Source: Diplonema japonicum (taxonomy: Eukaryota > Protista > Euglenozoa: Diplonemea). From it: 64,000 nucleotides of DNA. Of this stretch, positions 29,561-31,854 are shown piece after piece. The notes beneath the pieces are model-generated. The model was not told where the DNA came from and made no database searches. It saw only the letters and a list, made by a program, of their open reading frames with translations. A program made the translations under genes and the position numbers. The DNA is taken from the NCBI GenBank assembly GCA_964019335.1, contig OZ025740.1:62001-126000 (forward strand), given 5' to 3'. Numbering within the stretch: position 1 is the stretch's first letter; every line of letters begins with the position of its first letter.

Positions 29561-29984
29561 AGCGATCGCCTCCCCTGCCAGCCTCTGTTGCTTCAGGAAC
29601 TGTACCATGTAATCTACACTGCCGTCCACCACTGTGGTCAGGTACTCCTGGGTCCTGTTCTGTACGCTTTCCTCGCCCACTGCGAAGGCTGCGTTGACAG
29701 ACGTGTCTCTTGACTGCTTCGTGTCGTCCAGCGCAGTGTCGCTGCTCGTGATGGCAAGGAACGTGCAGATGAACGCGGTAACCACAATACACATCAACAC
29801 CAGTACAATGTTCAACACTTTGATGCTCGCCATTTTCTTTTTTTCTTTTTTTTTTTTGTGTACACAAAACAAAACTCGAAGTTTTTGTATTTTTATTCAA
29901 TATTAGAGAAGCGAGGAACCAGAGCCTTCGCTAAGAGGGGGTATGCCATTGCATATTAATCTCGCTGCCTCACGGATAAAAAAA
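29556..29984 (-). pseudogene. Truncated duplicate of the 5' end and upstream region of the 40633-43222 gene (continues 31596-31910)
   Basis: MASIKVLN...AGEAIA identical at DNA level to 42950-43222; upstream flanks match 43260-43910. Confidence 0.9.
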
Positions 29985-31595
29985 TATATATGAGTTAAAG
30001 GAAGTCTTTGTGAGACGCCCCCTTGTTCTCATCTTCTACCTGCACCTATCCCCTTTCAGCAGCGGTTTCTCCTCCTTTGGTGGTCTTGCCGGCCTTCTCC
30101 CCAGCCTGGCCGCTCTTTCTCTTCGTTCTCTCGCCCATTGTCCTTTCAACGCCTCTAGGTCATGCTTGGTCTTCGGTGATGCAAATATCGCCCTCCTGTT
30201 CCATCCGATCACCGCCTTTGTCCTCCCGATGGATCGTAGTGTGTGCACCCTTGTGCTCGGCTCAGCTGGGAAGGCCCTCCTTCCTTTCACCTTCTTCAGT
30301 ACCCTCCCTAGCTCCCATGTGTGCCAGATCTTCTTCATCAGTCCATGCAATCTCCTCGCTTTCTGCTGTACTTCTGCGAGATCCCCCAGCTTCCCTCCAA
30401 GGGTCTTCCCGGTCACGTTCTCGAAATCCAGTGCCAGCTCCACCGTCGACACTGACGTGTTCCTGTTGCCTGCATACCAGCGCAGTTGCCGCATCCACCT
30501 CAGCACCTCCTTCGTGTACTCCCGTAGGACATCCCCTGCCGGTAGCTTGCCGAAGTCCTTGTCCGACGGTACTGGGTGTTCTTGACCTTGTGTGATCTCC
30601 AGCCACTGGTGTGTGTGGTACACCTCCTGCCTCTTCGCTTGTAGGGCTGCGTCCCGCTCCCCCACCACCGCCAGCAGGTACCTCTGCGTTCCTTCGAGCC
30701 TTTCCCTGACATCCTTCCCTGCTCCCCTTGGCAGGATGCCATGCAGCTTCGTACACGGTTCCAGCCCCCTGCGCGTCATGCCTTCGTGTTCTTCCCGCTG
30801 TTGCACTTCCTTGGCCTTTTCGCACTCCCACAGTGCGTGCTCCAGCATGTTGGGCAGCTGTTGCTCCTGACCGCAGATGTCGCAGTGTGCCGTCGTGGGT
30901 TTGGCCTGCTTAGCTTCTTGCTTCCTCGCCTCCGCAATCAGCCACTTTTCGGTGTCCTCTTCTTCTTCTTCTTGTTCATCTTCAGCCTCGTCTTCATCCT
31001 CGTCTTCTTCCTTCCGCCATCGGGATGTGCTCCACCGTGTCCGTGCGCCATCCCCGTGGGTTGATGTAGAACACTGCCCCCGAGATGATCCTTCGCACGT
31101 CCCTTGCTGCAATCGGGTCCGCCACCACCAGCTTCCTCCACAGCGCGTTGGTCTCCGCTGCTGCCGCAGCTTCCATGCCCCCCATGGTGCTCCGTTTGCT
31201 CATGATTTCCTGTGCTTCCGCCCGCCTGAGTCGGTCCCTGATGTAGTGCTTGTAGGGCTCCTTTTCCAGTGCGTGGGTGTCCTTCTGCTGTGCCCAGCTT
31301 AACTTGATCTGAGGCAGCCACCTTTCCATCATGATGCCCACCGGTCCCAGCGGTATCTTCTTCCCGCTGTACCGTTTGGCAATGGCGTCGCAGCGTGTCC
31401 ACAGCTTGTCGTCCTTCTTGCAGGCTCTGTATAGGAGCATAAGTGCTCTGTATGCGGCTGTCATCTGTAGGTGGCTCGTGTGTCCCGGCAGTGTCACGGA
31501 TAGTACTGTGCCTGGGTTCCTGGTGCAGTACTTCTGCCCCCAGAGCGCGTACGTGGTCTCCTTCACCAGCGTGGCCATTTGTCCCGTTTTCGGCG
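29985..31595 (-). mobile_element. 5'-truncated non-LTR retrotransposon, 1611 bp, 7-bp A/T-run target-site duplication
   Basis: CDICGQ...LEHALWEC CCHC knuckle typical of LINE ORF2 C-termini; absent from the paralogous site 43661-43680; one frameshift. Confidence 0.85.
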
Positions 31596-31854
31596 AAAAA
31601 AAGATGCGGACCGACCCGATACACAGCAAGAAGCAAGACACCTGATGGTGCCTCATAGCCCCTCACCGCGTTTGTCGGCACACCTCGAACAAGGTTAGCT
31701 TCTCTCTTTTTTTTTTTTTTTTTTTTTTTTTCTGAGGGACTAAGCGCACTCCCAGACTAATTTCAACATGTCATTCTGCTTTACAGCGATGACGAAAAAG
31801 TCTTTTTCTTTTTTAAAAAAAAGCACGAAAAAAATAAGAACTTAAAAAAAAAAA

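What the first reader, a model, noticed from the sequence alone, without database searches (positions are those of the whole stretch)
29978..31602. LINE-like element with no poly(A) tail that duplicates a sense-strand T-run, shown by an empty paralogous site
Seen: the empty site 43661-43680 reads cggat-A7-gatgcgga, and the duplicate reads cggat-A7-[1611 bp]-A7-gatgcgga. The insert encodes a CCHC-knuckle LINE-type C-terminus on the minus strand. On its own sense strand it ends ..CTCATATATA, is flanked by T7 on both sides and has no poly(A). Known: L1-type TPRT primes a poly(A) RNA from a nicked T-rich DNA strand, leaving A-runs 3' of the element. Inference: the polarity is mirrored here, as if a nicked A-run primes a U-tailed or untailed RNA, giving a retrotransposon that targets sense-strand T-tracts.
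Basis: partly seen in the sequence, partly recalled or inferred. Interest (0 to 1): 0.85.

Follow-up and report, generated by a model that had tools for sequence, protein, structure and literature searches.

The report
Tail-less LINE that inserts into T-runs
This is a dead, front-truncated copy of a young and abundant jumping gene (a LINE) of a diplonemid protist; the family has no poly(A) tail, ends in a hairpin plus a short (TA)n repeat, lands almost only in runs of T on its own sense strand and points the same way as the host genes, which I did not find described for any LINE.

Summary
Window 29985-31595 (minus strand) is a 1611-bp, 5'-truncated copy of a ~6.3-kb APE+RT LINE. It lies between two A7 runs. 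The paralogous site at 43666-43672 has a single A7 and no insert.

The pattern holds family-wide:
- The last 21 bases occur 368 times in the 62.5-Mb genome, very probably Diplonema japonicum.
- Of 50 distinct 3' junctions, 46 run from (TA)n straight into T-rich sequence (background 5.6%).
- Of 30 junctions of 5'-truncated copies, 24 are preceded by T-runs.
- Only 3-4 sites genome-wide have an A-run after the 3' end.

Under target-primed reverse transcription the first nick must therefore lie in the A-run of the antisense strand. That is the mirror of L1.

- T-runs are no longer downstream than upstream (12 versus 15 copies, 3 equal).
- Mixed-sequence duplications abut (TA)n directly.
- A predicted 3' hairpin plus a variable (TA)n repeat fits a stringent-type LINE that needs no homopolymer tail.

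Copies are co-oriented with host genes: 93 of 96 share their contig's majority orientation.

This is a new variant of a known kind. Two earlier findings of this scan (s1-867015, s1-866996) reported T-tract-targeting, tail-less LINEs elsewhere in this genome.

The parts
29985..31595 (-). 5'-truncated, dead copy (1611 bp) of the LINE family. It corresponds to positions 4669-6289 of a 6289-bp full-length copy (end of RT, C-terminal CCHC domain, 3' UTR).
   Evidence: 98.95% identity to the full-length copy L036. Deletions of 9 nt (~30954) and 2 nt (~31008) relative to other copies (table 4).
29978..29984 (.). A7 on + (T7 on the element's sense strand): the target-site duplication copy lying 3' of the element.
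   Evidence: the empty paralog has a single A7.
31596..31602 (.). A7 on + (T7 sense): the target-site duplication copy lying 5' of the truncation point.
43666..43672 (.). Unoccupied paralogous target, a single A7/T7 run.
   Evidence: the joined flanks of the insert align across this point.
29990..30032 (-). Predicted 3'-terminal RNA hairpin immediately before the (UA)n end.
   Evidence: -13.4 kcal/mol, z = -2.3, 6 of 200 shuffles fold as well. It is a prediction only; no covariation test was possible.
29985..29991 (-). (TA)n terminal repeat of the element. The number of units varies between copies (1-15, mostly 2-3).
29556..29984 (.). Left arm of segmental duplicate A (paralog of 42945-43672, which carries its own 284-bp insert).
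31596..31903 (.). Right arm of segmental duplicate A (paralog of 43666-43910).

Best explanation
The insert is a 5'-truncated copy of a young APE+RT LINE family of a diplonemid. The family is of the stringent type: its RNA ends in a short hairpin followed by (UA)n, and no poly(A) is needed.

Most likely mechanism:
1. The element's endonuclease nicks the antisense strand inside or at the edge of an A-run, that is, a T-run on the element's sense strand.
2. The A-ended 3'-OH primes reverse transcription right at the (UA)n end of the RNA.
3. The second nick falls a few to about 20 nt further along the T-tract, so the T-rich target is duplicated (here T7).
4. Reverse transcription often stops early, giving 5'-truncated copies.

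Shown: the family, its domains, the 3' end, the absence of A tails, the T-run targets on both sides, the empty site, and co-orientation with host genes.

Inferred: which strand is nicked first (from the TPRT model), the role of the hairpin, and that specificity lies mainly in the endonuclease rather than in RNA-target pairing.

The strong co-orientation with host genes is most simply explained by selection. The sense strand is purine-rich and has no pyrimidine tracts. The antisense strand would place many polypyrimidine-AG sites into trans-spliced host precursors. This last point is also inference.
For: Family size and shape:
- 368 copies of the terminal 21-mer, 151 copies of a 21-mer 48-68 nt upstream of the end, and about 15-18 copies of the 5' end. 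This is the usual LINE 5'-truncation profile and fixes the polarity of the RNA.
- Copies are 97-100% identical.
- The full-length copy L036:~410-6684 carries Exo_endo_phos and RVT_1. The RT is related to L1 ORF2p and R2. A 99%-identical 1916-aa product stands in a transcriptome assembly.

Junctions:
- Empty versus filled site.
- 46 of 50 3' junctions and 24 of 30 5' junctions are T-rich, against a ~6% background.
- Duplications containing non-T bases abut (TA)n with 0-1 extra nt.
- Upstream T-runs are longer in 15 copies, downstream in 12, equal in 3.
- Only 3-4 sites genome-wide have A6 after the 3' end, against at least 177 forward-strand sites with T6 within 12 nt.

Structure: hairpin z = -2.3; variable (TA)n.

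Orientation:
- 93 of 96 copies lie in their contig's majority orientation.
- Flank ORFs lie on the element's sense strand in 37 loci and on the antisense strand in 7.
- All long ORFs around the window copy are on the minus strand.
- The sense strand has 12.6% T and no pyrimidine tract of 10 nt or more; the antisense strand has 29.

Literature: stringent 3'-end recognition and non-A repeat tails (PMC3747384).
Against: - No RNA 3' ends were seen. All runs available were contigs, so a U-run on the template, from read-through or added, is not excluded.
- In pure T-run targets extra T's would be invisible.
- The hairpin is a single-family prediction without covariation support.
- Endonuclease specificity was not tested.
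- T-runs of 8 or more are only ~1.5 times commoner than A-runs on the gene-sense strand. The near-total co-orientation therefore needs an extra factor that I can only infer.
- Only one empty site could be examined.
- The sampled loci are the best-scoring, youngest copies.
Confidence: 0.75

Rival explanations
1. Read-through pairing, as in R2 or microsatellite-specific LINEs. Every copy sits in a T-run, so transcripts run on into a U-run. These U's pair with the A-run of a nicked target and guide the RT, which still starts at a fixed distance from the hairpin. T-tract specificity would then be inherited through the RNA rather than set by the endonuclease alone.
For: - Every copy is followed by T-rich sequence.
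- In-register starts, with no surplus T, are what a hairpin-positioned RT would give.
- Unrelated retroposed sequences in the window (the 284-bp family and the SL-headed 184-nt insert) with different 3' ends are also flanked by T-runs. This fits a shared feature such as a U-run.
Against: - No RNA evidence.
- No 3' transductions were seen among 50 junctions.
- Sister LINE families could equally share an endonuclease preference.
Confidence: 0.3
2. The RNA receives a non-templated oligo(U) tail, or ends in a terminator U-run, which the A-run primer anneals to. This would be a true mirror image of L1 poly(A) priming.
For: The mirror geometry of the junctions. Long T-runs (up to T44) follow some copies.
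Against: - Downstream T-runs are not longer than upstream ones (12 versus 15).
- The empty site shows T7 giving T7 plus T7 with no surplus.
- Mixed duplications start directly after (TA)n.
- A conserved hairpin plus (TA)n end already accounts for template recognition.
Confidence: 0.1
3. Not insertion but loss: the 'empty' paralog arose by deletion between two pre-existing A7 runs. Alternatively, the T-runs are complements of poly(A) tails of retrocopied antisense transcripts.
For: Two 7-nt direct repeats could mediate a deletion. On the + strand the right-hand A-run could be read as an A tail.
Against: - The insert boundary coincides to the base with the 3' end shared by 368 copies.
- The other boundary is an arbitrary internal point, as in other truncated copies.
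- An antisense-RNA model needs always-complete cDNAs with a fixed 5' end and random 3' ends over 6 kb, the opposite of known retroposition.
- The empty site shows no net A-tail.
Confidence: 0.02

Closest known systems
Stringent-type LINEs with a 3' stem-loop and a short tandem-repeat tail (I factor (TAA)n; eel UnaL2 (TGTAA)n)
   Same: No poly(A). A predicted stem-loop lies directly before a short repeat whose unit number varies between copies, consistent with slippage. The 3' module is more abundant than the body of the element (PMC3747384).
   Different: The repeat is (TA)n. The element is followed almost invariably by a T-rich target that is duplicated. I did not find such a target rule for those elements in what I read.
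L1 (relaxed type, poly(A)-dependent, EN target TTTT/AA)
   Same: APE endonuclease plus RT, TPRT-type duplications of variable length, frequent 5' truncation, and a homopolymer-rich target.
   Different: The polarity is mirrored. L1's duplication begins with A's on the sense strand and the primer ends in T's. Here it begins with T's, so the primer must end in A's. There is no poly(A) tail.
Sequence- and microsatellite-specific LINEs (R1/R2, Dong, Waldo, Mino, Kibi, Koshi; Kojima & Fujiwara 2004, cited in PMC3747384)
   Same: Insertion into a defined simple sequence in a fixed orientation, no need for poly(A), and the target sequence present on both sides.
   Different: The target is a mononucleotide T-run scattered about every 200-300 bp through the genome, so the element is dispersed rather than confined to arrays. 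The nick position within the run is variable.
Ingi/L1Tc clade of trypanosomatids
   Same: Euglenozoan host. APE+RT with an NPGP (2A-like) motif just before the endonuclease (PMC3894237).
   Different: No RNase H domain was detected. The zinc motif is CCHC rather than C2H2. There is no poly(A). A separate ORF1-like frame is present. The canonical D and E of the 2A motif are not conserved. No phylogeny was made.
Earlier findings of this scan in the same genome (s1-867015, s1-866996)
   Same: Tail-less LINEs sitting in sense-strand T-tracts, co-oriented with host genes.
   Different: Those notes report a spliced-leader head or a 5' HDV-like ribozyme. This family shows neither an SL match at its 5' end nor any Rfam ribozyme hit.

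Membership tests
Non-LTR (LINE) retrotransposon, APE type | Reverse transcriptase domain in the full-length element | tested here: met
   RVT_1 9.9e-26; matches to L1 ORF2p and R2 RT chains at 1e-15 to 2e-21.
Non-LTR (LINE) retrotransposon, APE type | N-terminal apurinic/apyrimidinic-type endonuclease | tested here: met
   Exo_endo_phos 2.3e-12 and Exo_endo_phos_2 7.4e-06. The motifs QET, GDFN and DH are visible in the translation.
Non-LTR (LINE) retrotransposon, APE type | Common 3' end, variable 5' truncation, target-site duplications, no terminal repeats | tested here: met
   empty site.
L1-like (relaxed, poly(A)-primed) LINE | Poly(A) tail at the 3' end | tested here: not met
   0 of 50 junctions; 3-4 A6 runs after the 3' end genome-wide.
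L1-like (relaxed, poly(A)-primed) LINE | Duplication starting with A's on the sense strand (EN site TTTT/AA) | tested here: not met
   Duplications start with T's on the sense strand.
Stringent-type LINE with repeat tail | Conserved 3' stem-loop next to a short tandem repeat of variable length | tested here: inconclusive
   The hairpin is predicted at z = -2.3 and (TA)n has 1-15 units. There is no covariation or functional test.
Stringent-type LINE with repeat tail | 3' tail shared with non-autonomous or sister elements | tested here: inconclusive
   The terminal 21-mer has 368 copies, against 151 for a 21-mer 48-68 nt upstream. A sister subfamily is 73% identical at the 5' end. Contigs diverge at the hairpin base. 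The short copies could not be fetched.
Ingi/L1Tc clade | RNase H domain after the RT | tested here: not met
   No RNase H hit at E <= 0.1 in the 1434-aa ORF2.
Ingi/L1Tc clade | RT phylogeny placing it in the clade | not tested
   No reference clade sequences were available. The best non-diplonemid hits are very weak.
Sequence-specific LINE | Insertion in one sequence type in one orientation | tested here: met
   46 of 50 3' junctions and 24 of 30 5' junctions lie in T-rich runs on the sense strand. The target is a sequence class, not a single site.
HDV-ribozyme-headed or SL-headed diplonemid LINEs (earlier scan notes) | Spliced-leader sequence or HDV-like ribozyme at the 5' end | tested here: not met
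   No SL similarity in the first 400 nt. No ribozyme family in Rfam at E <= 10. Only 3 full-length 5' ends were readable.

The most novel reading that the evidence does not exclude
The T-tract would serve three roles at once. It is the insertion target. It supplies, through read-through or termination, the U-run that pairs with the A-run primer at the next target. And its upstream duplicate, followed by the AG seen just before the element's first bases in all three full-length copies read, forms a polypyrimidine-AG signal usable by the trans-splicing machinery. Each insertion duplicates a T-run, so such a system would breed its own targets. That could explain the extraordinary density of homopolymer runs in this genome (275 runs of 8 or more in 64 kb).
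Probability: 0.25. Interest if true: 0.8.

Novelty: new variant of a known kind. Interest (0 to 1): 0.62.

Why it matters
LINE target choice is usually explained either by L1-like TTTT/AA nicking with poly(A) pairing or by strict site specificity.

A dispersed, highly successful family that uses the opposite homopolymer, needs no A tail and is almost perfectly co-oriented with host transcription offers several things:
- a natural test of how much of TPRT targeting lies in the endonuclease and how much in RNA-primer pairing;
- a case of how a retrotransposon adapts to a polycistronic, trans-splicing genome, where polypyrimidine tracts are processing signals;
- a possible source of the unusual T/A-run load of diplonemid genomes.

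It also gives annotators a practical rule. In this genome retroposed sequences are flanked by T-runs on their sense strand, not followed by A tails.

Tried and rejected
1. Deletion origin of the empty site: rejected. The insert boundary is the family's canonical 3' end.
2. Antisense-RNA or poly(A) reading of the A-runs: rejected on the truncation profile and the empty site.
3. Systematic T-tail: not supported.
4. Spliced leader or anti-leader at the 5' end: none.
5. HDV-like or any other Rfam ribozyme at the 5' end: none at E <= 10.
6. Shared 3' tail between the LINE and the SL-headed 184-nt insert at 25122-25306: none.
7. More empty sites: joined flanks of all two-junction copies were searched against everything held, and only the window's pair turned up.
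8. Polymorphic empty allele in public runs. A contig in X2 and X4 skips 29978-31595, but its right arm carries the AG insertion of paralog B. It can be a path through the ~50 nt shared by the two paralogs, so it was not counted as evidence.
9. RNA 3' ends: all four runs laid were contigs of unknown kind, which cannot show ends.
10. Clade placement: the protein atlas and the homology search gave only diplonemid relatives and unnamed clusters. PDB gave L1 and R2 alike.
I did not try to read flanks by other means.
13. Literature searches for a T-tract-targeting LINE found none. The two diplonemid genome papers do not analyse these elements.

Full report
**1. The observation**

Read directly, the + strand has cggat, A7 (29978-29984), a 1611-bp insert (29985-31595), A7 (31596-31602), then gatgcgga. 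The site at 43661-43680 reads cggat, A7, gatgcgga.

The two sites lie in a ~95% identical segmental duplication: 29556-29984 plus 31596-31903 against 42945-43910. The primary assembly holds no third paralog of the immediate flanks.

On the minus strand the insert has two long reading frames broken by a frameshift. The frameshift comes from a 2-nt gap near 31008. There is also a 9-nt gap near 30954, both relative to other copies (table 4). Pfam sees nothing in the fragment alone.

**2. What the insert belongs to**

- A search of the window's own genome (62.5 Mb, 132 contigs) finds dozens of 97-100% identical copies and more than 500 candidates.
- Walking upstream in five copies gives a full-length element of about 6.3 kb, for example L036:~410-6684.
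- It has an ORF1-like frame, an NPGP (2A-like) motif, an APE endonuclease (Exo_endo_phos 2.3e-12), an RT (RVT_1 9.9e-26) and a C-terminal CCHC motif. No RNase H was detected.
- The RT matches L1 ORF2p and R2 structures about equally.
- A 99% identical 1916-aa product stands in a EukProt transcriptome assembly, and relatives at 33-45% identity are annotated in Diplonema papillatum.
- The genome size, the diplonemid relatives and earlier notes of this scan point to Diplonema japonicum YPF1604, a 62.3-Mb HiFi assembly (PMC13598402). I did not verify the species independently.
- The window copy corresponds to positions 4669-6289 of the 6289-bp reference copy.

**3. Polarity**

The terminal 21-mer occurs 368 times. 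A 21-mer 48-68 nt from the end occurs 151 times. The first 350 bp occur about 15-18 times.

Copies therefore share the end that lies 3' of the reading frame and are truncated from the other end. That fixes the RNA template as the ORF-sense strand.

**4. Junctions family-wide**

From 66 loci I obtained 50 distinct 3' junctions and 30 5' junctions of truncated copies.

- Every copy ends ...AACTCATAT(AT)n with 1-15 TA units, mostly 2-3.
- 46 of 50 then run straight into T-rich sequence. The pure T-run has a median of 7 and a maximum of 44. The background for the same criterion is 5.6% (p ~6e-53).
- 24 of 30 truncation points are preceded by T-rich runs, against a 6% background (p ~2e-24).
- No copy has an A tail.
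- Genome-wide, an A6 run follows the 3' end at only 3-4 sites. A T6 run lies within 12 nt at 177 or more sites on the forward strand alone; reverse-strand rows are inflated by overlapping matches.

Young copies have no A tail and non-random targets. The full element has an RT. The empty site cannot be a deletion, because the boundary is the family's canonical end.

**5. Tail or target?**

Under TPRT the primer is the antisense-strand 3'-OH at the left edge of the downstream duplicate. Here that primer ends in A's, the mirror of L1.

Three observations argue against a T (U) tail being copied into DNA:
- The empty site shows T7 giving T7 plus T7, with no surplus.
- In six copies whose duplication contains non-T bases (for example TATTTT, TCTTTT, TTTTTTCTT, TTTATTT, TTTTTCT) the duplicated target starts 0-1 nt after (TA)n.
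- Upstream runs are longer than downstream runs in 15 copies, shorter in 12 and equal in 3. This is the symmetry expected if both nicks fall at variable places in one pre-existing T-tract.

By this measure the duplication is roughly 4-20 nt.

A read-through U-run that pairs with the A-run while the RT starts at a fixed place would leave the same DNA signature. That model is therefore not excluded.

**6. The 3' end**

The last ~48 nt fold into a hairpin directly before (UA)n: -13.4 kcal/mol, z = -2.3. Over 132 nt the fold is no better than shuffles.

A hairpin plus a variable short repeat is the standard layout of stringent-type LINEs (PMC3747384). Lack of poly(A) is therefore ordinary for that class.

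The terminal module is more than twice as abundant as sequence 50-70 nt upstream. Public contigs diverge into T-run-type sequence exactly at the hairpin base (table 7). This suggests very short copies or sister and non-autonomous elements sharing the tail. I could not fetch them.

**7. Orientation**

- In the 100 listed copies, 93 of the 96 that lie on contigs with two or more copies share the contig's majority orientation.
- Flanking long ORFs lie on the element's sense strand in 37 loci and on the antisense strand in 7.
- In the window all long ORFs around the insert are on the minus strand, as is the insert.
- T-runs of 8 or more are only about 1.5 times as frequent as A-runs on that strand. 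Target asymmetry alone predicts roughly 60:40, not above 90:10.
- The element's sense strand is purine-rich (T 12.6%) with no pyrimidine tract of 10 nt or more. The antisense strand has 29, and 18 of them are followed by AG within 30 nt.

In a host that processes polycistronic precursors at polypyrimidine-AG sites (PMC10161547), antisense insertions should be harmful and sense insertions nearly neutral. This selection argument is inference. A transcription- or replication-coupled insertion bias is equally untested.

**8. Public reads**

All four runs laid were contigs of unknown library kind, so RNA ends cannot be read.

A contig in X2 and X4 skips 29978-31595. Its right arm carries the AG insertion typical of paralog B, and the two paralogs share about 50 identical bases at the site. 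I therefore treat it as a path through paralog B and not as a polymorphic empty allele.

**9. Comparison and novelty**

The element works like a stringent-type LINE with a repeat tail. In its fixed-orientation use of a simple sequence it resembles microsatellite-specific LINEs. It is not L1-like in tail or target, and it fails the RNase H criterion of the Ingi clade.

I found no description of a LINE specific for sense-strand T homopolymers. The diplonemid genome papers do not analyse their LINEs.

Two earlier findings of this scan (s1-867015, s1-866996) reported T-tract-targeting, tail-less, co-oriented LINEs elsewhere in this genome. This report confirms the rule independently for this family and adds:
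- an empty site;
- the upstream/downstream T-run symmetry test;
- the strand-composition argument.

Unlike those notes, I find neither a spliced-leader head nor a ribozyme hit here.

**10. Limits**

- The clade is unassigned.

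Noticed in passing
window 43338-43621 (paralog B) versus 29925-29935 (paralog A): A 284-bp insert present only in paralog B. It belongs to a retroposon family of at least 256 candidate copies that are 5'-truncated in minus-sense orientation and co-oriented with the LINE on shared contigs. It is flanked by A11 and A12, yet the empty site in paralog A has only AA (TAAGAG). Here T/A runs seem to have been gained on both sides, unlike the clean T7 case.
   Followed up: partly
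window 25122-25306 (minus strand): A 184-nt insert that starts with the 38-39-nt spliced-leader sequence followed by GT. It looks like an SL-RNA gene-type sequence rather than a spliced mRNA. It ends without an A tail and is flanked by T7/T8 on its sense strand. It shares no 3' tail with the LINE. First noted by the scan as s1-856850.
   Followed up: partly
window 12465-12600 (minus strand): A fragment of about 130 nt related to the LINE's region 150-230 nt from its 3' end, including a 58-nt stretch at 100% identity. It lacks the terminal hairpin and is flanked by T16 upstream and T7C10T12 downstream.
   Followed up: no
whole window: Extreme density of homopolymer runs: 116 T-runs and 159 A-runs of 8 or more in 64 kb (one per ~230 bp), and 80 runs of 15 or more.
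   Followed up: partly
G000 contigs (for example C7, C28, C30, C19, C20): LINE copies on one contig nearly all point the same way. On C7 they switch from minus to plus only near 850 kb, which suggests chromosome-scale directional gene clusters with strand-switch points.
   Followed up: partly
L036:~405-420; merged C82 and C23 copies: All three readable full-length copies begin with a T-rich tract followed by CAAAG, CAG or CGCAG and then GGGCTGGTAATTTGGG. A polypyrimidine tract plus AG therefore sits exactly at the element's 5' edge. The AG may be a trans-splice acceptor or junction filler; three copies are too few to tell.
   Followed up: partly
L036:~1554-1700: A long (AAC)n repeat inside the 5' third of the element, read as poly-N, poly-T or poly-Q in the three frames. 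Its length differs between copies and it is much shorter in the transcriptome-derived protein P0001.
   Followed up: no
L036:~2400-2430 (ORF2 N-terminus): A 2A-like motif GIHPNPGP lies just before the endonuclease. NPGP is present, but the canonical D and E of DxExNPGP are not (PMC3894237).
   Followed up: no
L066 (G000:C52:349310-352609): One copy ends in an unusually long (TA)13-15 run followed by an inverted copy of the element's last bases (GAGTTAAAGG). This gives a palindromic junction, possibly a snap-back or hairpin artefact of reverse transcription.
   Followed up: no
G000:C14:211172, C4:202106, C2:150681, C27:396689 and others: A sister subfamily only 71-73% identical in the first 270 bp. 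It sits at full-element distance from 3' ends that carry the same terminal 21-mer, so the 3' module is shared between diverged subfamilies.
   Followed up: no
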